From: Macrostomum lignano
Lineage: Eukaryota
Direction of reading: 5' to 3'
Assembly (NCBI GenBank): GCA_002269645.1
Contig: NIVC01001876.1
Coordinates: 119,118 to 183,117, forward strand
Length of the DNA stretch: 64,000 bases
The position numbers were made by a program, and so were the translations under genes. Below, one piece after another: positions 38,961 through 64,000 of the stretch. The notes under the pieces were generated by a model. It made no database searches. It was not told where the DNA came from and saw only the letters and a program-made list of their open reading frames with translations. Numbering within the stretch: position 1 is the first letter of the stretch; the number at the start of each line of letters is the position of its first letter.

Positions 38961-40174
38961 GCTGCAAGCTCCTTAGCCCTCAAAGAAATTTTTAATTGTC
39001 GCACTTTAACCCAATAGTTGCTGTTATAATACTTAAGGAATCTTCGAAAAGTTTTTTGATCATTGCTTAATCCGCTCGTAACCTTCGATGAAATTTTTGA
39101 AACTTCTTCCCGAATCAAAAAGAATCTTCCTTAGTCCACTCGATCCAATGTCCCCCGACTAATTTACCGAGAACGGGCCTCTCTCCAAGAGACGCATCCT
39201 TTTCATAGCAGCCCATAGCAGCTAAAATAATGTCATTTCTTGCGTGAATGAGCGCGGATTAATTTAAAGAAGCATGAGACATAGTTGGATTGTAAGAAGT
39301 CTCGCACAAATTGGACTCGGCTCAGTTCTTATGCTGCGGAATTTAGTTGGGTTCTATGCTGCCTGATTTGGTCGTAAACAAAATTTTCTTTACTTTTGTA
39401 CTATTCTGCTTTGCTGTCTTGCGCGTAGCTTAATTTCTATATTCACACAGTAATTCTATCAGCTCTTGTGTACTCAAATGATTCCCATTGATTCCGTATT
39501 TAATAAATATATAGTTGTACAAAATAGGTATTAGTAAGGTATATTAAGAAGAACTTATAAAGTACAAGCCTAAACGTTTTTCTTGAGCGCCCATGAACAC
39601 TTAAAAACATGTTTGAATCAAGGACCACTAAAGCAACGTATATACAGGACGCGACACTCACGTTTCGTGGAAAAAGTTTTGAATAGGAAGTTTTCGTTTT
39701 TTCAGCACAAAAAATGTTATTGCTTTCGATGGGAGGCAGACCCAATGTTCATCTTTTCATATGTTGTGCTTTGTGCCTTTCTTATAGCTCTATTGATATC
39801 CATAAAGCTTTTCGCTCAGAAAATTAGGATTCTATGTTAATTTTTTGTCTACGTACATTACCTGTACCTGAAATCATAAAAATGCATGGCACGGCTCGAA
39901 TCTTGGATTTTATGAATCTATTTTATCATCTCCGTTACACATGTTACACAGTCAGCTAAAAATGACAAAATGGATTCATAAAAAAGTACTCCTTGGTTTG
40001 AATTTTCCACGCCGAAACCATGCAATGCTCAACTTTCCTCAGATCTCAGCCCCAAGTGTTGCAATTCACAGCACGCCTCGGTTTTCGTCTCGGGGGGGGG
40101 GGCGGTTCATATCTCCACTGGGTTAGGCGTTGAGCTGCTTTCTAACGTCTGTTTTATCTGGACAGACCGACTTC

Positions 40175-40200
40175 TGTCTATCTATCTATCTATCTATCTG

Positions 40201-40233
<33 letters not shown>

Positions 40234-40256
40234 GTATCTATCTATCTATCTATCTG

Positions 40257-40311
<55 letters not shown>

Positions 40312-40312
40312 G

Positions 40313-40347
<35 letters not shown>

Positions 40348-40372
40348 GTCTATCTATCTATCTATCTATCTG

Positions 40373-40419
<47 letters not shown>

Positions 40420-40420
40420 G

Positions 40421-40483
<63 letters not shown>

Positions 40484-40500
40484 GTCTATCTATCTATCTG

Positions 40501-40541
<41 letters not shown>

Positions 40542-40552
40542 TTATCTATCTG

Positions 40553-40597
<45 letters not shown>

Positions 40598-40624
40598 GTA
40601 TCTATCTATCTATCTATCTATCTG

Positions 40625-40675
<51 letters not shown>

Positions 40676-40676
40676 G

Positions 40677-40727
<51 letters not shown>

Positions 40728-40728
40728 G

Positions 40729-40811
<83 letters not shown>

Positions 40812-40812
40812 G

Positions 40813-40847
<35 letters not shown>

Positions 40848-40848
40848 G

Positions 40849-40895
<47 letters not shown>

Positions 40896-40896
40896 G

Positions 40897-40931
<35 letters not shown>

Positions 40932-40932
40932 G

Positions 40933-40974
<42 letters not shown>

Positions 40975-40975
40975 C

Positions 40976-41019
<44 letters not shown>

Positions 41020-41020
41020 G

Positions 41021-41063
<43 letters not shown>

Positions 41064-41080
41064 GTCTATCTATCTATCTG

Positions 41081-41147
<67 letters not shown>

Positions 41148-41151
41148 GTCC

Positions 41152-41185
<34 letters not shown>

Positions 41186-41212
41186 GTATCTATCTATCTA
41201 TCTATCTATCTG

Positions 41213-41275
<63 letters not shown>

Positions 41276-41292
41276 GTCTATCTATCTATCTG

Positions 41293-41335
<43 letters not shown>

Positions 41336-41336
41336 G

Positions 41337-41435
<99 letters not shown>

Positions 41436-41436
41436 G

Positions 41437-41467
<31 letters not shown>

Positions 41468-41468
41468 G

Positions 41469-41518
<50 letters not shown>

Positions 41519-41543
41519 CATCTATCTATCTATCTATCTATCC

Positions 41544-41594
<51 letters not shown>

Positions 41595-41656
41595 GATCGA
41601 TCTATCTATCTATCTATCTATTTTATCCATCTATCTATCTATCTATCTATCTATCC

Positions 41657-41711
<55 letters not shown>

Positions 41712-41741
41712 GATCGATCTATCTGACCTATTAATCTATCC

Positions 41742-41809
<68 letters not shown>

Positions 41810-41826
41810 GTCTATCTATCTATCTG

Positions 41827-41877
<51 letters not shown>

Positions 41878-41878
41878 G

Positions 41879-41973
<95 letters not shown>

Positions 41974-41974
41974 G

Positions 41975-42005
<31 letters not shown>

Positions 42006-42006
42006 G

Positions 42007-42056
<50 letters not shown>

Positions 42057-42081
42057 CATCTATCTATCTATCTATCTATCC

Positions 42082-42132
<51 letters not shown>

Positions 42133-42194
42133 GATCGATCTATCTATCTATCTATCTATTTTATCCATCTATCTATCTATCTATCTATCTATCC

Positions 42195-42249
<55 letters not shown>

Positions 42250-42279
42250 GATCGATCTATCTGACCTATTAATCTATCC

Positions 42280-42321
<42 letters not shown>

Positions 42322-42368
42322 TTATCTATCGATCGATCGATCGATCTATCTGACCTAATAATCTATCC

Positions 42369-42416
<48 letters not shown>

Positions 42417-42457
42417 GTCTATCTATCTATCTATCTATCTGACCTAATAATCTATCC

Positions 42458-42505
<48 letters not shown>

Positions 42506-42549
42506 GTCTATCTATCTATCTATCTATCTGACCTAATAATCTATCTATC
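40175..42549. repeat. ~2.4-kb (TATC)n / (GATA)n satellite
   Basis: Continuous TATC with TGTC, TATG, TCCA and TCGA variants. Confidence 0.98.
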
Positions 42550-44213: not shown

Positions 44214-47200
44214 TCACTTGGTCTCAGCCGACAGTCGCTGGGCGCTGAATGGATCGTCGCAGTTGAGATTTCTCGACGTCGGCGAGCCACCGCCGTGAGA
44301 TTCCAACGTCTCGTTGAGCTGTTGAGGAAGCGGCCTGTGCGGATGCCGCTGGTGGTAATGGCAGTTGTGGTGTTGCCGGCGCCAGCTGCAAGTTGTTGGC
44401 TCTTTGCTGCTGTCGCTGTTGCTGTTACTTCTACCGGCGCTATTGTTGCTGCCTTGCTGCCTGTTGTTGTGATGGTTGTTGTTGTTGTTGTTGTTGGCAT
44501 TGTTGTTGGCATTGTTGCTGATTGAAGCCTGGGCGTCCTGCTGCTGCTGGTGGTGGTTTCGTGGCATCGAGTGCAGTCGCAGAGCTTCGCCAACGTTGGC
44601 GGCGGCTCCGCCTCGGTAAGCTTCGTCGCGATGTCGCGCTGGCGTCACAAGACGTCGCATTACCGCATTACCGTTCCGCCTCGCCGATGCGCTGGCCGTT
44701 GGACTTCGCCGAATCAATCGAAGCATGACGTTGCTGAAAGCGCGCCGAAATTTAAGCGACATCAAATTGTAAAGAATCGGGTTGGCTATGGAGGAGCCGA
44801 AGAATAGCGGGCCGGAGATGTGAAAAAGGGCCTGCTGGATCTTCGTGATGGCGCAGTCGTGGCAGAACGCCTCCTTGGGGACGGCCTCCGCCAGAATGCG
44901 AGACAGGTGGAACGGTGCATAGCATAGGAAGAAGGCCAGCACAATGCCAACTGCAATGGTGGATGCATGGGGTAATTGTTGTGAAGAAACTGAGAATGGT
45001 CATTTTTTTAATGGAGAATAGTCATTTAGGATCGTGTGATGAATTCATGAACAATCGCGTGAGTTTTCATGTAGAATCGTGTGAGTGTTCAGGTAGGTGA
45101 ATGATCAAGTAGAAACCTGTGAATGGTCAAGTAGAAACCTGTGAATGGTCAGGTAAAATCGTGTGAATGTTCAGGTAAGATCATGTGAATAGTCAGGTAG
45201 AATCTTATAATGCTCGTGTAGCATCGTATGAAAGGTCAGGTAAGATCGTGTGAATGGTCAGGTAGAGTCGTGTGAATGGTCAGGTAGAATCGTGTGAATC
45301 GTCGGGTAGAATCGTGTGAATCGTCGGGTAGAATCGTGTGAATCGTCGGGTAGAATCGTGTGAATCGTCGGGTAGAATCGTGTGAATGGTCGGGTAGAAT
45401 CGTGTTAATGGTCGGGTAGAATCGTGTGAATGGTTGGATAGAATCGTGTGAATGGTCGGGTAGAATCGTGTGAATGGTCAGGTAGAATCATGTGAATGGT
45501 CGGGGAAAATTGTGTGAATGGTCAGGTAGAATCTTGTGAATGGTCGGGTAGAATCTTGTGAATTGTCAAGCAGAATCGTGTGAATGCTCAGGTATAATTT
45601 TTTTGTATGCTCATATGAGATCGTGTGAGTATTCATTTTAGAATCGTGACAAGTTTGTGACCCATTTTGAGCAGTTTCTTCGCACTTTTTTATTCATTTA
45701 TCCGCTCATTTATTATTTTAGTGTTATTAATAATTATTTATTATATTTTTTCAAGCAGAGAATGCATCTGATTTTTAAATCCCTCCTATCTCCAAAAAAT
45801 CCAAGAGCTGATTAATTGGATTTGCGAGCAACGGAATTCAGCTATAACAAAAACCATGGTTACCACGCAACATAACAAAATATCTAAAGGAAGCTCTCAC
45901 AAGCCTAATGAACAAGCATTCAATCTAGGATTGGGACTTTTAACAACAAACTCGCAAGGCAGGTCGAGTGGGCTGTTAAGTGCCCGCCAGCTTCATCAGG
46001 CGCAATTGAGTTTCCACCGAGTCATCCCTTACTTCCTTCCGAGATTAGAAGCTCCCATAATGTACAGCTATGTGCTCAAGGATGCTTCTGCATGGAAACT
46101 GTTTGCCAATAGTTATTGTAAACGACTTTTTTGAATTATGCACTTTTAACGTTCGGGTTTGCTCACAACCGCAAAAAACGCAAATTATAGTGTGTTCTTT
46201 TCCCAAGTTCTCCAAACAACGTATGCATGCAAATGCATTGAACTTGGGCGAGAAAAGACGTATAAAGTGAAACCCACTGACCATGGAATCTCAGCAACCG
46301 CCATTGAGACTTGGAATCTCAGCAACCCACATTGAGACTTGGAATCTCAGCAACCCACATTGAGACTTGGAATCTCAGCAACCGCCATTGAGACTTGGAA
46401 TCTCAGCAACCCACATTGAGACTTGGAATCTCAGCAACCTCCATTGAGACTTGGAATCTCAGCAACCTCCATTGAGACTTGGAATCTCAGCAAACCTCCA
46501 TTGAGACTTGGAATCTCAGCAACCCCCATTGAGACTTGGAATCTCAGCAACCTCCATTAAGACTTGGAATCTCAGCAACCCCCATTGAGACTTGGAATCT
46601 CAGCAACCCACATTGAGACTTGGAATCTCAGCAACCCACCCCCTTTGAGACTTGGAATCTCTGCAACCCACATTGAGACTTGGAATCTCAGCAACCCACC
46701 CCCTTTGAGACTTGGAATCTCAGCAACCTCCATTGAGACTTGGAATCTCAGCAACCCACATTGAGACTTGGAATCTCAGCAACCCACCCCCTTTGAGAAT
46801 TGGAATCTCAGCAACCCCCATTGAGACTTGGAATCTCAGCAACCTCCATTGAGACTTGGAATCTCAGCAACCTCCATTAAGACTTGGAATCTCAGCAACC
46901 CCCATTGAGACTTGGAATCTCAGCAAACCCCATTGAGACTTGGAATCTCAGCAACCTCCATTGAGACTTGGAATCTCAGCAACCTCCATTGAGACTTGGA
47001 ATCTCAGCAACCTCCATTGAGACTTGGAATCTCAGCAAACCCCATTGAGACTTGGAATCTCAGCAACCTCCATTGAGACTTGGAATCTCAGCAACCTCCA
47101 TTGAGACTTGGAATCTCAGCAACCTCCATTGAGACTTGGAATCTCAGCAACCTCCATTGAGACTTGGAATCTCAGCAAACCTCCATTAAGACTTGGAATC

Positions 47201-50200
47201 TCAGCAACCCCCATTGAGACTTGGAATCTCAGCAAACCCCATTGAGACTTGGAATCTCAGCAACCTCCATTGAGACTTGGAATCTCAGCAACCTCCATTG
47301 AGACTTGGAATCTTAGCAAACCCCATTGAGACTTGGAATCTCAGCAACCTCCATTGAGACTTGGAATCTCAGCAAACCCCATTGAGACTTGGAATCTCAG
47401 CAACCCACATTGAGACTTGGAATCTCAGCAACCTCCATTAAGACTTGGAATCTCAGCAACCTCCATTGAGACTTGGAATCTCAGCAAGCCCCATTGAGAC
47501 TTAGAATCTTAGCAACCACCTCTATAACCTTGTCTTCAATCAATGCCAGGTTTTATACTTTCGAATATCCGTGTCTTGTACGGTTATCCGCCCAGATAGT
47601 ACAAGTACTTTCTGGTCTCCCCGGACATTGAAAGAGCTTTCTGATCTCTCCCGGAGATATCTCTAAGCTGCTTTACGTTCTTTGGGGTACTTTCAGTCTC
47701 CCCCCGGGAGTCACTGTTATGTCTTGCGTTGTCCGCAACTGGAGATCGCAAAGCAGAGTCAAATTTGTCTTGCGATCTCCGGCCGGAGACTGCAAACGCA
47801 CGGAGCTTGCAAAGCCCAACAGGGACTGTAAAAAACGCCCCAAAAAGCGCTCACCGAGCAGTTTCAGCAGAGTTTTTCGACCCCGCGCCTTCTGCACCGC
47901 CCGCTGCTCGTCGCTGGTGTGACTGTGCACCGAGCCGGCCGAGCTCTTCCTCGCTGCCGGATTCAACGAACGATGCACCGCAGTGCCAATTCGAACGTAC
48001 ATGGCAGCCATGAGCATCATTGGGCAGACGAACAGCAGCAGAGACGAAGCCAGAAACGAATACGGAATCCGTCGAGTCTTGGTCACCTCGCAGATTCGAG
48101 ACTCGATCAGCACTCGGCCCTGACTGCCGGTGCTTGAGTCGTTTCGAATTAGAACTTCGAATCCCAGCTGGGAGCTCATCACGCCAGACAGGCAGGCCGA
48201 CAGAATCCACGAGGCTGCGATGGCTTTCACGGCACGGCTGAGGCCCAGGCCGCGACGGATCTGGGCGAGATGTTGATGTTAGTAGTTAGTGCTGTTAGTT
48301 GATGTCAGGCGTGGTGAAATCACTGGACTCGATCGGTTCTTGGAAAACTACATTTTCAAAGCATTCGTTACCAGGTAGAAAAGTTATAAAAGATCATACA
48401 CATTCATTTTATATCTGTGCCTGATAAACTCAAGGTCTTTCATTGCTATTTGTTAGGTTTTTTCGAGAAAATACGCTTTTAAAAAGTACGCATTTACGTT
48501 TATTGATTAAAATCGTTAATGAATCTGAATTTATAAACGTTTGCGCGCAGAAATGCTGTTTAATCTCCTGTTAATCCCAAATCCCAAATCAAGACATCCC
48601 TTTCTGACAAGATCCACATAGGCCTCTGCTGGCTTCCCTTACTAAAATTTTTAATTAGTTGGACTGATTTTTATGAAGATATGAGCGTAGAACTCAATGC
48701 ACGCAAAAATTAAGGTGATTAGCATTCTATATTAATTAGGAAATATGGATAGATCAATTTAATTCGGGATTACGATACCGTCTGAGCCAGCTCTCCAGCT
48801 CGCTGTCTGGTTTGAAGTATTTTTTTCAATAGTTTTTCTTGTTTAAATTAGGCCATGAATAAATTCGTGTACTCATGTATATTAAATTTCCTTCAGTAGC
48901 ATTTATGATAATTAAAAATTTCCCATTTTGCTGTTTAACTGTCAGACAGGCAGGTGTTTCATCGTTTAAGTAAAATACCGCTTCCAAGAAGCATCACCTC
49001 CCAGCCCCGCTTCCAAGAAGCATCACCTCCCAGCAGCACCGCTTCCAGGAAGCATCACCTCCCAGCCCCGCTTCCAAGAAGCATCACCTCCCAGCAGCAC
49101 CGCTTCCAGGAAGCATCACCTCCCAACAGCACCGCTTCCAGGAAGCATCACCTCCCAGCAGCACCGCTTCCAGGAAGCATCACCTCCCAGCCCCGCTTCC
49201 AAGAAGCATCACCTCCCAGCAGTACCGCTTCCAAGAAGCATCACCTCCTAGCAGCATCGCTTTCAAGGAGCATCACCTCCCAGCAGCATCGCTTTCAAGG
49301 AGCATCACCTCTCAGCAGCATCGCTTTCAAGGAGCATCACCTCCCAGCAGCACCGCTTTCAGGAAGCATCACCTCCCAGCAGCACCGCTTCCAGTAAGCA
49401 TCACCTCCCAGCAGTACCGCTTCCAGGAAGCATCACCTCCCAGCAGTACCGCTTCCAGGAAGCATCACCTCCCAGCAGCACCGCTTCCAGGAAGCATCAC
49501 CTCCCAGCAGTACCGCTTCCAGGAAGCATCACCTCCCAGCAGTACCGCTTCCAGGAAGCATCACCTCCCAGCAGTACCGCTTCCAGGAAGCATCACCTCC
49601 CAGCAGCACCGCTTCCAGGAAGCATCACCTCCCAGCAGTACCGCTTCCAGGAAGCATCACCTCCCAGCAGTACCGCTTCCAGGAAGCATCACCTCCCAGC
49701 AGTACCGCTTCCAAGAAGCATCACCTCCCAGCAGTACCGCTTCCAAGAAGCATCACCTCCTAGCAGCATCGCTTTCAAGGAGCATCACCTCCCAGCAGCA
49801 TCGCTTTCAAGGAGCATCACCTCTCAGCAGCATCGCTTTCAAGGAGCATCACCTCCCAGCAGCACCGCTTTCAGGAAGCATCACCTCCCAGCAGCACCGC
49901 TTCCAGTAAGCATCACCTCCCAGCAGTACCGCTTCCAAGAAGCATCACCTCCCAGCAGTACCGCTTCCAGGAAGCATCACCTCCCAGCAGCACCGCTTCC
50001 AGGAAGCATCACCTCCCAGCAGTACCGCTTCCAGGAAGCATCACCTCCCAGCAGTACCGCTTCCAAGAAGCATCACCTCCCAGCAGTACCGCTTCCAGGA
50101 AGCATCACCTCCCAGCAGCACCGCTTCCAGGAAGCATCACCTCCCAGCAGTACCGCTTCCAAGAAGCATCACCTCCCAGCAGCACCGCTTCCAGGAAGCA

Positions 50201-50871
50201 TCACCTCCCAGCAGCACCGCTTCCAAGAAGCATCACCTCCCAGCAGTACCGCTTCCAAGAAGCATCACCTCCCAGCAGCACCGCTTCCAAGAAGCATCAC
50301 CTCCCAGCAGTACCGCTTCCAAGAAGCATCACCTCCTAGCAGCATCGCTTTCAAGGAGCATCACCTCCCAGCAACTGCAACCCAAGGAAACATCGGCTCC
50401 CGGTAGTTCCAACCCAATGAAATGTCACAATTTGAGAAGACACACCTGCATCGGGCGGCAGATGGCGCAGTATCTCTCCACAGTCAGAGCAGTGACAGTC
50501 AGGGCCGAACAGTAGGTGCACATCTCGGATAGAAAACCGGACCCAACGCACAGGAGCTGACTGTCAGGAAACGGATATCGTCTCCAGTGTGTGAGCAGAT
50601 CGAAGGGCAGTCGCGACCAAAGCACCACTAAGTCGGACACGCTCAAATTGAACAGATAAAAATTAGTAGCAGTTCGCATGAACTGCGTGCGCGCAATCAC
50701 TACGCAGGTGATTAAATTTCCAACGCAGCCGATAAAGAATATGCAGGCTAAAGCCACGGTTAGAGCAGTTAATTGGCCAACACTGTAAGTGGCAGCTTGG
50801 CCCCACTGATCTTCGATGCACTGTGCATCAGTGGTGTTTAAATCGCATTCCACAACGTGATAGGTTGTCAT
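44214..50871 (-). CDS. Rhodopsin-family neuropeptide GPCR, neuromedin-U/pyrokinin(capa)-receptor-like; exons 50871-50446, 48260-47855, 44950-44214
   Basis: TM1-3 read GNLITCVVIARTQFMRTATNFYLFNLSVSD...SEMCTYCSALTVTALTVERYCAICRP, the PRXamide/NMU-receptor-type signature. TM4-5 read RAVKAIAASW and LLLFVCPMMLMAAMYVRIG. TM6-7 read AFFLCYAPFH and NPILYNLMSLKFRRAF. Splice phases (0, 1) fit. Confidence 0.9.
45070..45630. repeat. 22-bp minisatellite (GGTAGAATCGTGTGAATGGTCG) in GPCR intron 2
   Basis: About 24 units. Confidence 0.93.
46280..47515. repeat. 28-bp minisatellite (CCATTGAGACTTGGAATCTCAGCAACCT) in GPCR intron 2
   Basis: About 43 units. Each unit holds the inverted pair TGAGA...TCTCA. Confidence 0.96.
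48975..50375. repeat. 32-bp minisatellite (GCATCACCTCCCAGCAGTACCGCTTCCAGGAA) in GPCR intron 1
   Basis: About 44 units. Confidence 0.96.
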
Positions 50872-52056
50872 GACGAAGTCTACGCTTTGTTTAATTTTTG
50901 TCAAGAAAAATATTCATACATCTAGAGGCAAAAATTTTTAAGGGCTTTTGTATGAATGCATAGGAGAGAGCCTTCAGCCAACCAGATAGATGCTATACTT
51001 AAATCTGATTTCATTGGATAAAAGTCGACTGGGTCTGTGGATGAAGAACTCAGAAAAACTCAGCCATGCACATTGCACACTTAAACAGCTCTAATAGCAG
51101 CGCCTGATCGCTCTATGCTACTGATTTTGCTATTTATTCTAACTGCAAGTATGTAATGAGTTGTACAATATTAATTTCCGAGTGCAATTAGCAATTAGGC
51201 AATGACTACCATTGCGCACACTGTATTGTAAAGTTAAGACAATACCGCTAGGTAAGTATGGTGGGTCCCAAGAGCCACCTGGAACTTGAAATCCTCCTTT
51301 TCGTAGCGCAAAGCTATTTGAAGTAGGTCTGCACAACCAACTGTTGAAATACGTTAACAACTGCAGACTCTGAAGATCTTGAAGCAGTACATAAGTCCCC
51401 TGGGCTCGATTCTATTAACGTACGCGTGGTCACGCATGGGCCGTCAACGCATGGGCCGTCGGAGAGGGGGTCTGGCGGGCGAGATGTCCCATAAAATTCT
51501 TGGTCTAGTAATGAGATTTAACATCGAGGCTCTGATCCAGAAGCCACGACACCCCATTTTGAGTTCATGCACTAAATTCTGCATGACCTCAGAGGTCTTG
51601 TCGTGTAGCTTATTTACTCTCATTGGGGTCAGAGTGCGGGCACAAGGTAATTCGCTGCTCTAAAGGATGGGCGTTTTTCTTCTATTTTGGCTTATTAGAC
51701 AGCCAAATTGTCAGGAGTTCAGGCTGACAGCAAGGAGCATCAAATTGGTTTTTTCAGAGAAAATTTTAATAGCTATACCTATCTCTTTTTCGCAGTGATG
51801 AATCCATCCAAAAATTACCTTTAAAAAGTGAAATTAATCGCATTTGTGGAGTTTAATCACTGACTAATGCAGTTAGTACATGTCAATAAGCTTCTTTCTC
51901 TAGCGCTACATCAGGAAAGCAGTTCTATCGAACTAAAACTAACTTTTTCATCAGAAACATTAATAAAGAATTGACTGATGAATTAATTAACTGACGTACT
52001 GGATGCCAAATGCTTGACCTTGGACACGAAAATCCGCTAGCTAATCTGTTATTAAC

Positions 52057-55335: not shown

Positions 55336-56597
55336 TAGCTGAGTCCGGTAGCTACGAGGATCTCTACCAGGTACTTACTAGACGATACGAGAAGAGCTCG
55401 CGACCTGTTTACCTGGCTAACACTGTACTAAACGTTACATTCAGTGTCAAGCTCAATCGCTTAATGGATCTGGACGAGAAGAATCAAATATTACACATGA
55501 ACGTTGTTGTCATGGAGTCGTGGCGCGACGAACGACTCACTTGGAGTCCGGCAAATTATTCTGGCATAGAAGAGTTCGTACTGCCGGCTGGGGAAATCTG
55601 GTTGCCAGACATCTACGTCTACAACAACGCGGCTGATGGCAACGATGGGTTCATCTTCGACAACAGCAGCCGAGTGACTGTGAGCCACACTGGCCACGTA
55701 GTTTGGAACATTCCGTCGACGATCAAGAGCTCCTGCAGCGTTGACGTACTCTATTTTCCATTCGATCATCAGTTCTGCGATATCGTGTTCGCTTCGTGGA
55801 CCTACGATGCCAGACAGGTTGACCTGCAGATGCCACCAGGCCGTGGCGGCGCGGTTGACAAGTCCATCCTTGAGCAGCACTCCGAACTGCAAGTCTCCGG
55901 CCTGCAGATGCAGAGGTCGGTGCAAACGACCTTGAACAACCTGACATTCCCGATGCTCCGGCTGAGAATTCACATCGAGAGGAAAGCTCTGTACTATTCC
56001 TACACTGTCATTGCTCCAAGCATCATGCTGTGCATCCTGACGCTGTTCAGCTTCTGGCTGCCCTGTCATATTGCCGAGAAGATCGAAATCGGTCTAACCG
56101 TGTTCCTATTTCTCTACTTCCTCGAGCTGCTCATCGCGGAGAACACGCCCGAGTCGAATTCCACTCCAATCATTGGGATATTCCTCACCACGGTGATGAC
56201 TCTGAACTCGCTGTCGCTAATTATGGCCACGATAGTGATGCACGTGCAGAGCAGAGGCGACACCGACCCCTGCCCGACCGTGCCGCTGTGGCTGTGGCGA
56301 ATCAGTCGACGCTTCCTGGGGCCCGTCACCTACACCCAGCTGCGCTGGCAGGAGGCAGCCTTTGCCGAGGGCTTCGACAGAATTGCTGGCCGAGACGCCA
56401 ACGCGGCGGTCACCAGCGACGACGAGGTCGACATGAACAGAATGGAGCGGGCCAAGTGGCTGTACATAGCCGAGGTGATTGACAAATTTTTGTTTGAATT
56501 CTATTTAACCTGCACAGTGCTCAGCATAGTGATTGTGCTGCACGTGCTGCCAGCGTCTCACGCCAGCACCGTCTACGACAATCGGCTGACGGACTGA
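55333..56597 (+). CDS. Nicotinic-acetylcholine-receptor-like Cys-loop ligand-gated ion channel subunit (non-alpha type). The mature protein is in one uninterrupted exon; the signal-peptide exon is unresolved (candidate ~54526-54576)
   Basis: The frame is open upstream of 55464 (YEKSSRPV...LNRLMDLDEKNQIL). It contains WRDERLTW, IWLPDIYVYN, the Cys-loop CSVDVLYFPFDHQFC, SWTY, four TM helices (M2 AEKIEIGLTVFLFL) and EVIDKFL before M4. Loop C has no vicinal CC. Confidence 0.92.
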
Positions 56598-57945: not shown

Positions 57946-58222
57946 AATTTCCTGAGAACATCTCTAGTTATCATAATTATAACCATCTCATTATTCTTGA
58001 CGCTTATTGACATTAATTTCTGTTCTCATAGGCACAAGTCCTTGCATAGGCATTTAGAATTGATATCATTCATTATAGTACTTACAGTAGCATTAAATGC
58101 TCTAATAATCTTTGCGTAAAAATAACTTTTTTACTATCCCAATCGAAAATAAAAACTGTTGAATTTAAATCTCACTCGTATGCTTTGGCGTGAACAATAT
58201 CGCATTTATGTATATATATTAT

Positions 58223-58257
<35 letters not shown>

Positions 58258-60707
58258 TGCATTAGGCATTTCTTGGGACAAGCGTGTATAAACTGACCCG
58301 TACTATTAGGACCAAAAATGTGTTGGGCCAGGCCCAATAAGTGCGTCCCGACACTTCCAAAAATGAATTCTATTGAAATGAAAAAATATTCATTGGAACC
58401 GTCTTTCGATTCTCCTTTCAAAAATCAATGTCATTTTTTCATATTTTTAATCAAACACAAGGAAACTAATGATTTGCAGTGTCCTAAGAAGTTTAAAAAA
58501 TTATGCGAACTGATGGTCTGATCCAACAGAACAATTGGGTCTCAAATCTGAATTCTCGTTTTATTACAATATTTCTTACAATATCAAGAAAGTCTACTAC
58601 AAGTAACAGATAGAGGTTCTCCACAGGGCTGCCAATCGACACTTGAAAGGATCCTGACATTTGGCATCGTGTTTACTATAAAATATGAAATAATTTAATA
58701 AAGATTTAGAATATTACAATCAAGCATACAAACCTTATAGATTTAGTATATTTAGATTTTTGCATAGAAACAGCTAGCATCTAAATTCATTAGCTTCCAA
58801 TTTCACTTATACACGAAACATAACAAATTAAGGTTACATCCGCTCGTGCCCTGGGCCATTTTAACTGAAATTCTCGTTTTAAATCCGCTGCATTAATCTA
58901 TTTGTCATATGTGAATGGGATTAACGGACTCAAGTTAGTGACTGGAGGCCATTAACGTAAAGTGACACTTTGAGTGAGGTAGTTTTCTGGTGGAAATTCT
59001 CACAGTCTTATGAAGCGCTTTTAGAGCAAAGAAATAAAGGGCAAAGAAAAACTTTGCATTTCCCGAGAAAACCGAGGACGAGTATTAGAGGGAAACGTTT
59101 AATCTCTAAGGCTTTAAATGACTTCTTTATTGGCCTGGGTTTGGGCAGCCATACTATGCAGCAAATTTTTTCCTAGAATTATGATAATTATCGTCTGGTA
59201 TACTGAAAAGTACGGAGATACCAAGAAACTTAAGATGACTGCATGGACTGCTAGCACATGTTTGAGTGTCACTGTCACTGTAAAGTCTAAATCGATGACT
59301 AGTTGGCCCAAAACTAACTACTAGGCCTTCCTGGAAAACAATTCTGCTTATCTTGGATCGTAAAGATAAACCCACGTACAGTGCAGAAGTGTTAGGACAA
59401 GCGTGTACAAGACCCAGGCAATCCCTTACCCAGGCCACGTGTACATTCCTATCGCGGTGGGGGGAAGCAGGGAGGAGAGGCGGGTGCAAGGGAGTCAGGA
59501 TAAAGTTTACACTGAAGTTGAGGCCTACAAGAGGAAGAGCCAATTCTAACGGAAAGGTACATGTAGAAGTTCCCTTTGACAAACGGCGTACTGCATATGT
59601 TCAAAACGAATATAATTCATTTACGAGACCTGCACTACACAGACAAAATGTGCCATGTCACAAGAGTTTCCATGCATGACCTGGCATGAAAAGACTTGGC
59701 TAGGAACCATTACACATATGTAAGTAAAATTTAAAATTATTTTTAAAATTTTATGATTAAATAAAAACTTAACTGGAATTTACATATGTCTTTTCTAAAA
59801 TTCCAGATACGTTGATATCGATAAGCTACCGTTTTCTTCTATAACAAACAGATTTGCCTTCATTGTCCAGTAAGTATTGTCTCGTACTCGTATATGTCGT
59901 ATTTTTGTACGTTGAAAAAAATAATAAGCAGCCTAGTAATACTCTGAGCTCAGTGAAATATAAGAGAGGCGGCACGATCACCTTATTTATCAATTAATTT
60001 ACAACAGCCAGTTGAGCAATCATAAGTAGGCAAAATTTACACTTCTAGGAAGAACAAATTTTACTAAAAGTTTCAATCAAAACATTTGGGAAAGAAATCT
60101 TGCACGACACATCGCCCACAGTACTAGAGACTTGGAGAAATACTATGTGAGTTTGCTGGGCAACTAATGTAATATATTACTGTTATAATTCGATAGTCGA
60201 ATTATTTTTTTTACCCAAAGCAGTGCTATTGCATAACTAAAGAACAGTATAAAAATGACAGCATTCTAGAACGAGAAACAAAGCTTACTGCAAAGGCAAA
60301 CGCCGAAAGAAAAGCAGGGTAGAGTCAGCAGCAAAAAAGAAGCTCATCTAATTGGAAAGATGGGCGGTCAGCAAAGAGATAGGATCTCAGAAAATTGCAA
60401 CTCCTAGTAACTGAAACTCAATTGCAATAAGTGTTTTGTTCTCTAGGGCATTATTAAAACAAGCAAGCCTGCCTGCAGTCAGTTAGTGAGAAAGTAAGTT
60501 GTTGCGGCACTATCGGGAAAGTGAAATTTGTACTCCATCTGACTCACACAAGCAGCAGCGTTGGGACAAACCTCGAGTATTTTAATTGTACAGTAAAATT
60601 TCATTGACAATGAAGCATTTATTAGAAAAGCGACATTTAAATCTGTTTTCAAACAAATCAGACCGATTTCTCAATAAGTTATTTTTCTTTTGTGCGCCCA
60701 CGCACAG

Positions 60708-63700
60708 GTTCATCCGCATTCAAACTCGCCGCTGCATCCGTCATTTGGTTCACTTGCTGCCCACAAGCCGCAGCAGCAGCAGCAGCAGCAGCAGCCGCTA
60801 TCCGTGCAGGCAGTCAGTCTATTTGTGAATTTTCTGGTGGATCTGAAGAAAACCCGTCTGGCACAGGATTAAAGAGAAAGAGACGATCTGTTTTGGGTGA
60901 GTATTATCTGCTGTAGAAGTATTGTACACCAGAGTACTTGTGTTACCTGGTAGAGCACAATTCAAAAGCAATGCAACAATCTCAGTGGCATTGTTGGGAC
61001 ACAAGCTACAAACGCAATGAATAGTAAACACAGCCCAGCCTAGCTCAAGGCTAGTAATTTGTTGGGCATTTATTGGGACATTGCAGCCAGGCCTATTTTT
61101 GAACAGCATTTGTTGGGTCGCACTTATTGGGACAATACTGATTCTAATCGCGACTACTTCTGAGTTCTGACTTTTCAAAACAGACCCAGCATTAGTTGAA
61201 CACGTTCTATTAAAGGGTTCCTTTATAGCGTATTAATGATTACTAAAGCAAGCCTATCTTAATTGATTTCTTTTCCTCGCAGCTTCTGAAGTCAGCAACG
61301 CCAGCGACATGCCTAAGAGACAAGAATGCGCTTTAACGATCAGCAGCGAGCATTCTGATCTCGCCGCTGCATCCGTCATTTGGTTCACTTGCTGCTCACA
61401 AGCCGCAGCAGCAGCAGCAGCAGCAGCAGCCGCTATCCGTGCAGGCAGTCAGTCTATTTGTGAATTTTCTGGTGGATCTGAAGAAAACCCGTCTGGCACA
61501 GGATTAAAGAGAAAGAGACGATCTGTTTTGGGTGAGTATTATCTGCTGTAGAAGTATTGTACACCAGAGTACTTGTGTTACCTGGTAGAGCACAATTCAA
61601 AAGCAATGCAACAATCTCAGTGGCATTGTTGGGACACAAGCTACAAACGCAATGAATAGTAAACACAGCCCAGCCTAGCTCAAGGCTAGTAATTTGTTGG
61701 GCATTTATTGGGACATTGCAGCCAGGCCTATTTTTGAACAGCATTTGTTGGGTCGCACTTATTGGGACAATACTGATTCTAATCGCGACTACTTCTGAGT
61801 TCTGACTTTTCAAAACAGACCCAGCATTAGTTGAACACGTTCTATTAAAGGGTTCCTTTATAGCGTATTAATAATTACTAAAGCAAGCCTATCTTAATTG
61901 ATTTCTTTTCCTCGCAGCTTCTGAAGTCAGCAACGCCAGCGACATGCCTAAGAGACAAGAATGCGCTTTAACGATCAGCAGCGAGCATTCTGATCTCGCC
62001 GCTGCATCCGTCATTTGGTTCACTTGCTGCTCACAAGCCGCAGCAGCAGCAGCAGCAGCAGCAGCCGCTATCCGTGCAGGCAGTCAGTCTATTTGTGAAT
62101 TTTCTGGTGGATCTGAAGAAAACCCGTCTGGCACAGGATTAAAGAGAAAGAGACGATCTGTTTTGGGTGAGTATTATCTGCTGTAGAAGTATTGTACACC
62201 AGAGTACTTGTGTTACCTGGTAGAGCACAATTCAAAAGCAATGCAACAATCTCAGTGGCATTGTTGGGACACAAGCTACAAACGCAATGAATAGTAAACA
62301 CAGCCCAGCCTAGCTCAAGGCTAGTAATTTGTTGGGCATTTATTGGGACATTGCAGCCAGGCCTATTTTTGAACAGCATTTGTTGGGTCGCACTTATTGG
62401 GACAATACTGATTCTAATCGCGACTACTTCTGAGTTCTGACTTTTCAAAACAGACCCAGCATTAGTTGAACACGTTCTATTAAAGGGTTCCTTTATAGCG
62501 TATTAATGATTACTAAAGCAAGCCTATCTTAATTGATTTCTTTTCCTCGCAGCTTCTGAAGTCAGCAACGCCAGCGACATGCCTAAGAGACAAGAATGCG
62601 CTTTAACGATCAGCAGCGAGCATTCTGATCTCGCCGCTGCATCCGTCATTTGGTTCACTTGCTGCTCACAAGCCGCAGCAGCAGCAGCAGCAGCAGCAGC
62701 CGCTATCCGTGCAGGCAGTCAGTCTATTTGTGAATTTTCTGGTGGATCTGAAGAAAACCCGTCTGGCACAGGATTAAAGAGAAAGAGACGATCTGTTTTG
62801 GGTGAGTATTATCTGCTGTAGAAGTATTGTACACCAGAGTACTTGTGTTACCTGGTAGAGCACAATTCAAAAGCAATGCAACAATCTCAGTGGCATTGTT
62901 GGGACACAAGCTACAAACGCAATGAATAGTAAACACAGCCCAGCCTAGCTCAAGGCTAGTAATTTGTTGGGCATTTATTGGGACATTGCAGCCAGGCCTA
63001 TTTTTGAACAGCATTTGTTGGGTCGCACTTACTGGGACAATACTGATTCTAATCGCGACTACTTCTGAGTTCTGACTTTTCAAAACAGACCCAGCATTAG
63101 TTGAACACGTTCTATTAAAGGGTTCCTTTATAGCGTATTAATGATTACTAAAGCAAGCCTATCTTAATTGATTTCTTTTCCTCGCAGCTTCTGAAGTCAG
63201 CAACGCCAGCGACATGCCTAAGAGACAAGAATGCGCTTTAACGATCAGCAGCGAGCATTCTGATCTCGCCGCTGCATCCGTCATTTGGTTCACTTGCTGC
63301 TCACAAGCCGCAGCAGCAGCAGCAGCAGCAGCAGCCGCTATCCGTGCAGGCAGTCAGTCTATTTGTGAATTTTCTGGTGGATCTGAAGAAAACCCGTCTG
63401 GCACAGGATTAAAGAGAAAGAGACGATCTGTTTTGGGTGAGTATTATCTGCTGTAGAAGTATTGTACACCAGAGTACTTGTGTTACCTGGTAGAGCACAA
63501 TTCAAAAGCAATGCAACAATCTCAGTGGCATTGTTGGGACACAAGCTACAAACGCAATGAATAGTAAACACAGCCCAGCCTAGCTCAAGGCTAGTAATTT
63601 GTTGGGCATTTATTGGGACATTGCAGCCAGGCCTATTTTTGAACAGCATTTGTTGGGTCGCACTTACTGGGACAATACTGATTCTAATCGCGACTACTTC

Positions 63701-64000
63701 TGAGTTCTGACTTTTCAAAACAGACCCAGCATTAGTTGAACATGTTCTATTAAAGGGTTCCTTTATAGCGTATTAATGATTACTAAAGCAAGCCTATCTT
63801 AATTGATTTCTTTTCCTCGCAGCTTCTGAAGTCAGCAACGCCAGCGACATGCCTAAGAGACAAGAATGCGCTTTAACGATCAGCAGCGAGCATTCTGATC
63901 TCGCCGCTGCATCCGTCATTTGGTTCACTTGCTGCTCACAAGCCGCAGCAGCAGCAGCAGCAGCAGCAGCCGCTATCCGTGCAGGCAGTCAGTCTATTTG
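60708..64000 (+). CDS. Putative repeated coding exons of an unknown gene: 60708-60896, then 61283-61531, 61918-62166, 62553-62801, 63188-63436, 63823-(truncated)
   Basis: Each exon has a polypyrimidine acceptor (TTTCTTTTCCTCGCAG) and a G|GTGAGT donor. The lengths are 189 and 249 nt, both multiples of 3 and phase 1-1. Only that frame is stop-free. No homology was recognised. Confidence 0.55.
60726..64000. repeat. 635-bp tandem array, more than 5 near-identical copies, running off the window end
   Basis: Identical ORFs recur every 635 bp (61309, 61944, 62579, 63214). Only isolated substitutions were seen between copies. Confidence 0.98.

What the first reader, a model, noticed from the sequence alone, without database searches (positions are those of the whole stretch)
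60708..64000. Frame-preserving intragenic amplification: each 635-bp unit is one chimeric exon plus one intron
Seen: every unit has a consensus acceptor (TTGATTTCTTTTCCTCGCAG) and donor (TTGG|GTGAGT). They bound a 249-nt phase 1-1 exon that is open only in that frame (SEVSNASDMPKRQECALTISSEHSDLAAASVIWFTCCSQ-poly(A)-IRAGSQSICEFSGGSEENPSGTGLKRKRRSVL). The first exon (60708-60896) has its own acceptor and unique 5' bases (GTTCATCCGCATTCAAA), is also phase 1-1, and joins the array sequence at CTCGCCGCTG. The two junction contexts share GCATTC just upstream (GCATTCAAACTC versus GCATTCTGATCTC). Inference: a segment spanning 3' exon A, the intron and 5' exon B was tandemly amplified with breakpoints inside exons. 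This would create new in-frame B/A chimeric exons and a protein of at least 6 repeats whose length varies with copy number. The >99% copy identity implies very recent expansion or active homogenisation.
Basis: partly seen in the sequence, partly recalled or inferred. Interest (0 to 1): 0.78.

Follow-up and report, generated by a model that had tools for sequence, protein, structure and literature searches.

The report
Spliced repeat array inside mobile element
The 635-base repeats are real and are spliced as one exon plus one intron, but they form the expandable core of a roughly 3.5-kb flatworm element scattered over at least five genome sites, and nothing shows that the repeat protein it could encode is kept by selection.

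Summary
From 60725 to the window end there are 5.2 tandem copies of a 635-bp unit that differ at 0-3 bases. Each has an AG acceptor, a GTGAGT donor and a 249-nt phase 1-1 exon.

The window is Macrostomum lignano contig NIVC01001876.1 (Mlig_3_7). A transcript-derived GenBank gene model on this contig uses exactly the predicted junctions, 60896>61283 and 61531>61918.

The array is not an amplification inside one host gene. The whole block is a 2.45-kb left arm (from 58257), a first exon, the array, a terminal exon with stop and AATAAA, and a 0.95-kb right arm. It recurs with identical ends at five or more unrelated sites. It is bounded by imperfect inverted repeats and (GT)n. A 15-nt terminal motif is repeated twice in every "intron". 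Arrays range from 8 to at least 19 exons.

The 83-aa repeat has no relative outside M. lignano, no domain and no confident fold. Its codon usage is not gene-like. Exons vary as much as introns, and one array carries an in-frame stop in about 11 of 16 units.

Best reading: a non-autonomous mobile element with a transcribed, spliced internal macrosatellite. Its coding status is unresolved and probably unconstrained.

The parts
58225..58256 (.). (GT)17 microsatellite plus TTT that abuts the left end of the element. It is either flank or target.
   Evidence: TRF and sequence. Five copies with unrelated upstream DNA all converge here (A2).
58257..58286 (+). Left terminal inverted repeat, GTGCATTAGGCATTTCTTGGGACAAGCGTG. 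It contains the 15-nt motif GCAYTTMTTGGSMCA at 58266-58280.
   Evidence: Homology between copies starts exactly here. It aligns with the reverse complement of the right end at the same offset (score 36 against shuffles of 20.6 +/- 3.3).
58330..58344 (-). Second, inverted copy of the terminal motif, inside the palindrome TTGGGCCAGGCCCAA. With 58266-58280 it forms a subterminal hairpin.
58257..60707 (+). Left arm of the element (2451 nt). It has no ORF with a domain. It is the presumed promoter/outron region.
   Evidence: Shared by the window, L001, L003 and L004 at 97-98.3%. Pfam finds nothing. It is a mosaic between copies.
60708..60896 (+). First exon (189 nt), with AG acceptor at 60706-60707 and no ATG. 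It is the likely spliced-leader trans-splice acceptor (inferred).
   Evidence: UniProt models P0025, P0027 and P0028 start exactly at this base (VHPHSNS...).
60725..64000 (+). Tandem array of the 635-bp unit, 5.16 copies in the window. It continues at least 1.7 kb on the contig.
60897..61282 (+). Intron 1 (386 nt, GTGAGT...CAG). The same intron occurs at 61532-61917, 62167-62552, 62802-63187 and 63437-63822. Each holds two + strand copies of the terminal motif (e.g. 61066-61080 and 61120-61134).
61283..61531 (+). Internal exon (249 nt, phase 1-1), encoding (A)SEVSNASDMPKRQECALTISSEHSDLAAASVIWFTCCSQ-A11-IRAGSQSICEFSGGSEENPSGTGLKRKRRSVL. It contains the first ATG of the spliced RNA (61309).
61918..62166 (+). 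Internal exon, identical in translation.
62553..62801 (+). Internal exon, identical in translation.
63188..63436 (+). Internal exon, identical in translation.
63823..64000 (+). Internal exon, cut by the window end.
61401..61430 (+). (GCA)10 tract inside each exon, which reads as poly-Ala, poly-Gln or poly-Ser depending on frame. It also occurs at 60766, 62036, 62671, 63306 and 63941. It accounts for most of the exon length variation between copies (7-17 Ala).
61340..61347 (+). Alternative acceptor TCAGCAG|C used by several UniProt models. It shifts reading to the poly-Gln frame, which stops at TAA before the donor.
   Evidence: Read from the models against the sequence.

Best explanation
The 635-bp array is the internal macrosatellite of a non-autonomous element specific to Macrostomum lignano. 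The element is bounded by inverted repeats. It is about 3.5 kb plus the array and is dispersed over at least five unrelated genomic sites.

The element is transcribed on the + strand. The RNA probably receives the spliced leader at 60708 (inferred). Each unit's 386-nt segment, which carries two copies of the element's 15-nt terminal motif, is removed as an intron (supported by annotated transcripts). The transcript ends after a terminal exon with a stop codon and AATAAA (seen in complete copies).

Arrays grow, shrink and are homogenised within each copy by unequal exchange between units. This gives 8 to at least 19 exons per copy.

The spliced RNA has a long open frame of 83-aa modules. That frame looks young and unconstrained rather than a conserved protein, and whether it is translated is not known.
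For: Same block, different surroundings:
- Homology between the window (=L011), L001, L003, L004 and L008 begins at the same base, GTGCATTAGG (window 58257).
- Homology ends at the same base, ...CCTCGTGCAC, in L001, L003, L004, L005 and L006/L010.
- The DNA outside these points is unrelated.

Features of the ends:
- The two ends are imperfect inverted repeats.
- The motif GCAYTTMTTGGSMCA occurs only inside the element: at both ends in inverted orientation, and twice per intron. It occurs 0 times in the other 58 kb, and 0.13 are expected by chance.
- No transposase or other domain is found in the arms.

Splicing:
- Model P0030 on this contig needs junctions 60896>61283 and 61531>61918.
- The annotation is RNA-seq based (PMC5730564).
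- The terminal exon, stop and AATAAA are seen in L001 and L003.

Array dynamics:
- Copy number differs per site.
- Variants are array-specific.
- Within-array divergence is 0.16-0.6%, against 0.7-1.0% between arrays.

No sign of constraint on the protein:
- All 29 database relatives are from M. lignano. A scan of 1.84 billion representatives adds nothing.
- There is no Pfam or PDB match.
- AlphaFold2 gives pLDDT 38.
- Codon-usage score is -0.06 bits per codon, against +0.1 to +0.4 for genes in the window.
- Variable columns are 10/206 in exons and 30/390 in introns. Exon changes are 6 non-synonymous or nonsense against 2 synonymous.
- A stop codon has spread through L002.
Against: - No target-site duplication could be read, because both junctions lie in GTTT(GT)n.
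- No autonomous partner and no empty site were found. The tools hold no M. lignano genome to search.
- Spread by microsatellite-mediated segmental duplication is therefore not excluded.
- A 249-nt exon that is both a multiple of three and open would arise by chance only a few percent of the time.
- The frame is intact in most units of four of the five arrays read.
- One diverged exon (UniProt A0A1I8FV09, about 50% identical) keeps the same frame.
- These points leave real room for a coding function. All copies are less than 1% apart, so the tests for selection have little power.
Confidence: 0.55

Rival explanations
1. This is a genuine protein-coding gene whose exon-plus-intron unit was amplified in frame. 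It would make a secreted or processed polyprotein of 83-aa modules, each with four Cys and a hydrophobic/poly-Ala core, separated by RKRR furin-type sites. Length would vary with copy number. The gene happens to be duplicated or carried to several sites.
For: - The exons are phase-symmetric and open, and the junctions are used in annotated transcripts.
- The first ATG of the spliced RNA, apart from the spliced leader's own, opens the repeat frame and stays open to the window end (382+ aa).
- The terminal exon supplies a stop and a poly(A) signal.
- KRKRR lies at each module's end.
- UniProt auto-names several models 'Secreted protein'.
- The diverged exon P0058 keeps the frame.
Against: - The protein is an orphan with no domain and no confident fold, and its codon usage is not coding-like.
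- The exon is not more conserved than the intron, and changes are mostly non-synonymous.
- A stop codon is homogenised through L002, and terminal-exon frameshifts occur in L003 and L004.
- Models read three frames.
- The introns carry the element's terminal motif, so the unit is element sequence and not a captured host gene.
Confidence: 0.27
2. The block was spread by segmental duplication or ectopic recombination at (GT)n microsatellites in a recently polyploid genome, not by transposition. The inverted similarity of the ends is incidental.
For: - Every junction abuts (GT)n.
- No target-site duplication or transposase was found.
- The assembly is known to be highly redundant (PMC5730564).
- The left arm is a mosaic, which shows exchange between copies.
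Against: - Five different left and five different right contexts break at the same base.
- Ends with inverted symmetry share a 15-nt motif that is also reiterated internally and is absent from 58 kb of flank.
- Homeologous duplicates would share long flanks, and these copies do not.
Confidence: 0.13
3. The function lies in the intron. The array would be a host gene for intron-encoded small RNAs, as in the SNORD115/116 units, and the exons would be non-coding carriers.
For: It has the architecture of one short exon plus one intron repeated in tandem. Intron and exon are equally conserved.
Against: - No Rfam family comes near its threshold.
- The intron fold is no better than shuffles on either strand (z -0.67 and -1.33).
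- No C/D or H/ACA box arrangement was seen on reading.
Confidence: 0.03
4. Assembly artefact: a single copy expanded by the assembler.
For: The contig ends inside the array and its last 1 kb is full of 1-nt indels.
Against: Units carry ordered private variants. Three complete arrays with both arms are assembled on other contigs with 8, 10 and 11 exons.
Confidence: 0.02

Closest known systems
Non-autonomous transposons with a central tandem-repeat array. Examples are the oyster Cg_HINE/pearl Helentron derivatives (PMC7492417) and the Drosophila DINE-1 Helentrons (PMC4067079). Tetris and foldback elements are cited from my own knowledge.
   Same: - Dispersed copies with conserved left and right arms.
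- Subterminal inverted repeats with a nearby complementary copy on the left and a palindrome near the right end.
- An associated microsatellite.
- A central array whose copy number differs between insertions.
- No coding capacity for a transposase.
   Different: - The monomer is 635 bp here, against 140-180 bp.
- The arms are kilobases long.
- The microsatellite lies outside the ends, not inside the left arm.
- The monomer is transcribed and spliced as exon plus intron with an open, phase-symmetric frame.
- The superfamily is undetermined: no TC/CTRR ends and no TSD could be read.
Intragenic exon-plus-intron VNTRs in protein-coding genes: the human LPA kringle IV-2 repeat and the NBPF Olduvai exon doublets (own knowledge).
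   Same: The tandem unit contains whole exon(s) plus intron. The exons are phase-symmetric, so copy number changes protein length in frame. The copies are highly homogenised, and copy number varies.
   Different: Those are single-locus host genes encoding recognised folded domains under selection. Here the array sits in a multi-copy element, the module is an orphan with no fold, and one copy has a homogenised stop codon.
Tandem snoRNA host-gene units: SNORD115/116 in SNHG14 (own knowledge).
   Same: One short exon plus one intron, repeated in tandem and spliced in series.
   Different: No intronic small RNA was detectable. The exons here keep an open frame.
Multi-copy peptide precursors with dibasic cleavage sites, such as neuropeptide or antimicrobial polyproteins (own knowledge).
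   Same: Identical modules, each ending in KRKRR.
   Different: There is no demonstrated signal peptide and no conservation beyond the species. The modules are 83 aa with a 26-residue hydrophobic/poly-Ala stretch.

Membership tests
Exon-plus-intron VNTR inside a protein-coding gene (LPA KIV-2 type) | The tandem unit holds complete exon(s) and intron(s) with canonical splice sites. | tested here: met
   AG and GTGAGT are present in every unit.
Exon-plus-intron VNTR inside a protein-coding gene (LPA KIV-2 type) | Successive units are joined in mature RNA. | tested here: met
   This is indirect. GenBank model P0030 on this contig requires 60896>61283 and 61531>61918. No reads were inspected.
Exon-plus-intron VNTR inside a protein-coding gene (LPA KIV-2 type) | Exon length is a multiple of 3, the phases are symmetric and the frame is open. 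| tested here: met
   The exon is 249 nt and phase 1-1 in the window. Other copies are 237-267 nt and mostly multiples of 3.
Exon-plus-intron VNTR inside a protein-coding gene (LPA KIV-2 type) | The encoded repeat is a protein module maintained by selection. | tested here: inconclusive
   It is an orphan with no domain or fold. Exon variability is about equal to intron variability. A stop has spread in L002. But the copies are less than 1% apart, so power is low.
Exon-plus-intron VNTR inside a protein-coding gene (LPA KIV-2 type) | Resides in one host gene at one locus. | tested here: not met
   There are at least five sites with unrelated flanks.
Non-autonomous DNA transposon with internal tandem repeats | Several copies with identical termini in unrelated flanking DNA. 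| tested here: met
Non-autonomous DNA transposon with internal tandem repeats | Terminal or subterminal inverted repeats. | tested here: met
   The inverted repeats are imperfect, about 22/30 at the tips. The local score is 36 against 20.6 +/- 3.3. The shared 15-mer lies in inverted orientation at both ends.
Non-autonomous DNA transposon with internal tandem repeats | Target-site duplication. | tested here: inconclusive
   All junctions read GTTT|element|GTTT(GT)n. The microsatellite context hides any TSD.
Non-autonomous DNA transposon with internal tandem repeats | No transposase of its own. | tested here: met
   No Pfam hit in the arm ORFs or in the repeat.
Non-autonomous DNA transposon with internal tandem repeats | Empty (unoccupied) paralogous or allelic sites, and an autonomous partner with the same ends. 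| not testable with these tools
   There is no searchable M. lignano genome. An attempt via the neighbouring receptor gene found no homeologue in the protein database.
snoRNA/small-RNA host gene array | An intron-encoded structured small RNA. | tested here: not met
   Rfam: nothing near threshold. Fold z-scores are -0.67 and -1.33.
Secreted polyprotein precursor | An N-terminal signal peptide and dibasic sites between modules. | tested here: inconclusive
   KRKRR is present in each module. The first exon has no ATG, and the first AUG gives MPKRQECALTISSEHSD followed by a hydrophobic stretch. No signal-peptide predictor was available.

The most novel reading that the evidence does not exclude
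A mobile element that carries its own spliced-leader trans-spliced, multi-exon gene, in which the exon array expands and contracts independently at each insertion. It would produce a family of length-variable polyproteins: 83-aa Cys-containing modules released at RKRR sites. The element's transposase-binding motifs would be hidden in the introns. In other words, a transposon-borne, rapidly evolving peptide factory whose gene structure and mobility signals are interleaved in one repeat unit.
Probability: 0.15. Interest if true: 0.7.

Novelty: new variant of a known kind. Interest (0 to 1): 0.42.

Why it matters
Tandem arrays inside transposons are a known route by which satellite DNA is born and scattered. 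In-frame exon-plus-intron VNTRs are a known route to length-variable proteins. Here the two coincide. The monomer of a transposon-internal array is itself a spliced exon-intron unit with an open, phase-symmetric frame, and the element's terminal motif sits in the intron.

If the frame is translated, this would be a clear case of a mobile element generating and dispersing a new, copy-number-variable gene. If it is not, it is a caution for annotation. This one element accounts for at least 39 'genes' (Mlig029855.gN) and dozens of UniProt entries read in three frames. Some of these are auto-named Dymeclin, UCH, Rho-GAP or 'Secreted protein'.

It also marks places where the Mlig_3_7 assembly breaks.

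Tried and rejected
- **Small-RNA host gene.** The Rfam scan of 58000-62600 at permissive E-values found nothing. Intron folds on both strands are no better than shuffles. Rejected.
- **Domain, structure and fold searches of the repeat.** Pfam gave only sub-threshold hits driven by poly-Ala. The PDB sequence search gave nothing. AlphaFold2 on a single sequence gave pLDDT 38. These results are uninformative or negative.
- **Remote homology.** The word-indexed search and the full HMMER scan of 1.84 billion representatives found only M. lignano models and one chance hit (P0059). Searching with the diverged exon P0058 found only itself, and its DNA is not on record.
- **Expression data.** Gene ids Mlig029855, Mlig003618 and Mlig020682 were not found in the full text or in the held supplements of three M. 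lignano papers.
- **Empty-site test through a homeologue of the neighbouring Cys-loop receptor gene.** No close M. lignano protein is in the database.
- **Homology of the 17 unique bases and the upstream flank to the unit.** Not significant (score 25 against 20 +/- 2.3). The GCATTC microhomology can therefore be neither confirmed nor excluded as a breakpoint.
- **Bacterial promoter/terminator scan of the left arm.** Not applicable to a flatworm and ignored.
- **The ISXO2/IS1595-type transposase ORF at 6207-6887 as a possible partner.** The terminal motif does not occur near it.
Full report
**What is in the window.** Comparing each base with the base 635 positions on shows no similarity up to 60724 and near identity from 60725 (CTCGCCGCTG) to 64000. 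The five full units differ from unit 2 at 0-3 positions, and neighbouring units share variants. Each unit carries TTGATTTCTTTTCCTCGCAG|CTTCTG and TTTTGG|GTGAGT. These delimit 249-nt exons (61283-61531, 61918-62166, 62553-62801, 63188-63436 and 63823-, cut by the window end) and 386-nt introns. The first exon, 60708-60896, has its own AG acceptor and 17 unique bases. It is 189 nt long and has no ATG. One caveat applies: the minus strand of the unit has a longer open stretch (137 aa), so ORF length by itself proves little.

**Where the window comes from, and whether the splicing is real.** The 83-aa module finds 29 database proteins, all from the flatworm Macrostomum lignano. Looking up where these are encoded returned contigs of assembly Mlig_3_7, GCA_002269645.1. 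Locus L011 (NIVC01001876.1) has the same left flank as the window. It is identical wherever I compared it. The window is therefore about positions 119,118-183,117 of that contig.

GenBank model P0030 is annotated on this contig at window 60860-62033. Translating 60860-60896 + 61283-61531 + 61918-62033 reproduces it, except for four fewer alanines. The Mlig_3_7 annotation was built from RNA-seq (STAR/StringTie), mapped de novo transcripts, and experimentally located trans-splice and poly(A) sites, with ORFs called by TransDecoder (PMC5730564). This is indirect but real evidence that the predicted junctions are used. An intron-retaining model also exists (P0046...RRSVLGEY). I could not inspect reads.

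**The end of the gene.** The contig stops 1.7 kb beyond the window, still inside the array, in poorly polished sequence. Complete copies on other contigs show the end. A last exon has the normal acceptor and 5' part and diverges after ATCCGTGC. In L001 it reads ...AAIRAGSQLIDEFSGRAGYFLSF, then a stop, followed about 70 nt later by AATAAA. In L003 and L004 a 1-nt deletion gives ...AAICAAVS and a stop. The diverged tail still aligns with the normal tail for 45 nt (score 46 against 21 +/- 2 for shuffles). The sequence upstream of 60725 shows no significant similarity to the unit.

But all three exon types share a core of roughly 100-140 nt. Unequal exchange within that shared core explains the array at least as well as breakage at the GCATTC microhomology, and the data cannot separate the two.

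**The array is not inside one host gene.** Pairwise comparison of the window, L001, L003 and L004 shows homology that starts at the same base in all of them, window 58257 (GTGCATTAGGCATTTCTTGGGAC...). It ends at the same base...CTTGGCCAATAAGTGCCTCGTGCAC (L001:12447). Nothing in common lies outside these points.

- Alignments of the junctions show five different left contexts: window=L011, L001, L003, L004 and L008.
- They show five different right contexts: L001, L003, L004, L005 and L006=L010.
- Called genes around the copies are unrelated: a Cys-loop receptor ORF upstream here, a myosin model around L004, a TIR-domain model on the other strand around L003, and a cathepsin-L-like gene near L008.
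- The two ends are imperfect inverted repeats at the same offset (score 36 against 20.6 +/- 3.3).
- Both ends abut GTTT and a (GT)n tract of variable length, which hides any target-site duplication.
- The arms (2451 nt on the left, about 950 nt on the right) have no ORF with a Pfam match.

A 15-nt motif from the termini, GCAYTTMTTGGSMCA, occurs at the left end (+), again inverted at 58330-58344, at the right end (-), and twice in every unit's intron (+). It occurs nowhere else in the window, where 0.13 matches are expected by chance. This ties the repeat unit to the element's own terminal sequences. It argues against a captured host gene.

The architecture is that of non-autonomous transposons with a central tandem array, as described for oyster Helentron derivatives: subterminal inverted repeats with a nearby complementary copy, a 3' palindrome, a microsatellite and a variable central array (PMC7492417). 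I cannot assign a superfamily. Without an empty site, spread by microsatellite-mediated duplication remains possible.

**Array dynamics.**
- Counting donor sites gives 7, 10 and 9 in the three complete copies, which is 8, 11 and 10 exons once the terminal exon is added.
- It gives at least 7 to at least 18 in copies cut by contig ends. Several contigs end inside arrays.
- Arrays carry private, partly homogenised variants. L003 has A/C at unit positions 1 and 15 in 9 of 9 units. L002 has G100A in 11 of 15 aligned units. In L004 the first residue shifts from mostly Ala in early units to Asp in late units, and the (GCA)n tract lengthens along the array.
- Mean substitution divergence is 0.16-0.6% within arrays and 0.7-1.0% between arrays. 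The right arm is about 0.7-1% diverged and the left arm 1.7-3.0%.
- The left arm is a mosaic. L003 groups with L004 in 58755-59997, but L004 groups with the window and L001 in 59998-60707. Copies therefore exchange sequence.

This fits unequal crossing-over and conversion within arrays plus occasional exchange between copies.

**Is the repeat protein real?**

Points in favour:
- The exon is a multiple of three and open, which I estimate would arise by chance in only a few percent of cases.
- The frame is intact in all window units, 5 of 6 units in L001, 8 of 9 in L003 and all 7 read in L004. The two exceptions are 1-2-nt deletions that could be long-read errors.
- Apart from the AUG that ends the 35-nt spliced leader (sequence in PMC8629364), the first AUG of the spliced RNA is at 61309. 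It opens the repeat frame through to the window end.
- One diverged exon, about 50% identical, keeps the frame (UniProt A0A1I8FV09).

Points against:
- There is no relative outside the species, even in a full HMMER scan of 1.84 billion representatives.
- There is no domain, no PDB relative and no confident fold.
- The codon-usage score is -0.06 bits per codon, the same as the poly-Gln frame, whereas genes in the window score +0.1 to +0.4.
- Exons are not clearly more conserved than introns: 10/206 against 30/390 variable columns.
- The exon changes are six non-synonymous or nonsense against two synonymous.
- In L002 a Trp-to-stop change has been spread to most units.
- Published models read the repeat in three frames through alternative sites.

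If the leader is added at 60708, its AUG is in frame with a 55-aa poly-Gln ORF that stops inside exon 1. Three UniProt models begin at exactly that base, which is why I infer trans-splicing there.

All copies are less than 1% apart, so none of these tests is powerful. I put a functional repeat protein at roughly one in four.

**Verdict.** The sequence observation is correct, and the splice prediction is borne out by existing annotation. The 'intragenic amplification creating a repeat protein' reading is only partly supported. What is amplified is the core of a dispersed, probably mobile, non-autonomous element, and the open frame shows no sign of constraint.

Both known kinds apply: transposon-internal tandem arrays and in-frame exon-intron VNTRs. 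Their combination is what is unusual, with the element's terminal motif reiterated in the introns. I found no description of it in the searchable literature on M. lignano.

Interest is moderate. It matters mainly to people working on transposon-satellite links, on de novo genes, and on M. lignano annotation, where this one element accounts for at least 39 partial 'genes'.

Noticed in passing
window 1-64000: The window is extremely rich in minisatellites: 84 TRF rows, with periods of 11-62 bp and often 25-45 copies. It also holds a 2.4-kb (TCTA)n tract at 40173-42549. This fits the reported 15% simple and tandem repeats in this genome.
   Followed up: no
window 55464-56597 (+): A 377-aa ORF with the ligand-binding and transmembrane domains of a Cys-loop (nicotinic-type) receptor lies in a single exon. 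It ends 1.7 kb upstream of the element. No identical or close M. lignano protein is in the database; the best hit is 55% identical.
   Followed up: partly
window 44214-50904 (-): A rhodopsin-type GPCR is split over three ORF blocks (50425-50904, 47673-48230, 44214-44942). Its introns are filled by a 32-bp x44 and a 28-bp x44 minisatellite (48977-50373, 46284-47517).
   Followed up: partly
window 6207-6887 (-): An ORF carries an ISXO2/IS1595-type DDE transposase domain (E 9e-24), which indicates a DNA-transposon remnant or copy. It does not carry the terminal motif of the element studied here.
   Followed up: partly
window 10432-11475 (+): An ORF starting like TFIIE-beta (weak Pfam hit, below the cut-off) runs in frame into an 18-bp x34 minisatellite (10829-11444), giving APATEG-like repeats. 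This is probably an exon followed by a repeat-filled intron rather than a real repeat protein.
   Followed up: no
window 20839-22813 (+): An RMKL/TRM11-like methyltransferase domain lies in the ORF at 22301-22813. The 260-aa ORF at 20839-21621 has no Pfam hit.
   Followed up: no
L001:11651-11829 (right arm of the element): A 38-bp x4.7 minisatellite lies just after the poly(A) signal. Each copy contains ATTGTTGGGACA, the 3' half of the element's terminal motif. The heptamer TTGGGAC occurs 15 times inside the element part of the window and 3 times in the other 58 kb.
   Followed up: partly
UniProt/GenBank models P0014, P0024-P0026, P0028, P0029: Database names such as Dymeclin, UCH domain-containing, BAF250_C, Rho-GAP and DRIM domain-containing are attached to short proteins that consist only of this repeat read in various frames. 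These are likely annotation carry-over from fused or neighbouring models.
   Followed up: no
L011:13880-14841 (contig NIVC01001876.1 end): The last 1 kb or so of the contig shows a 1-nt indel every 100 nt or so, including in splice sites. This is typical of an unpolished long-read contig end. Frameshifts near contig ends (also in L002) should not be read as biology.
   Followed up: partly
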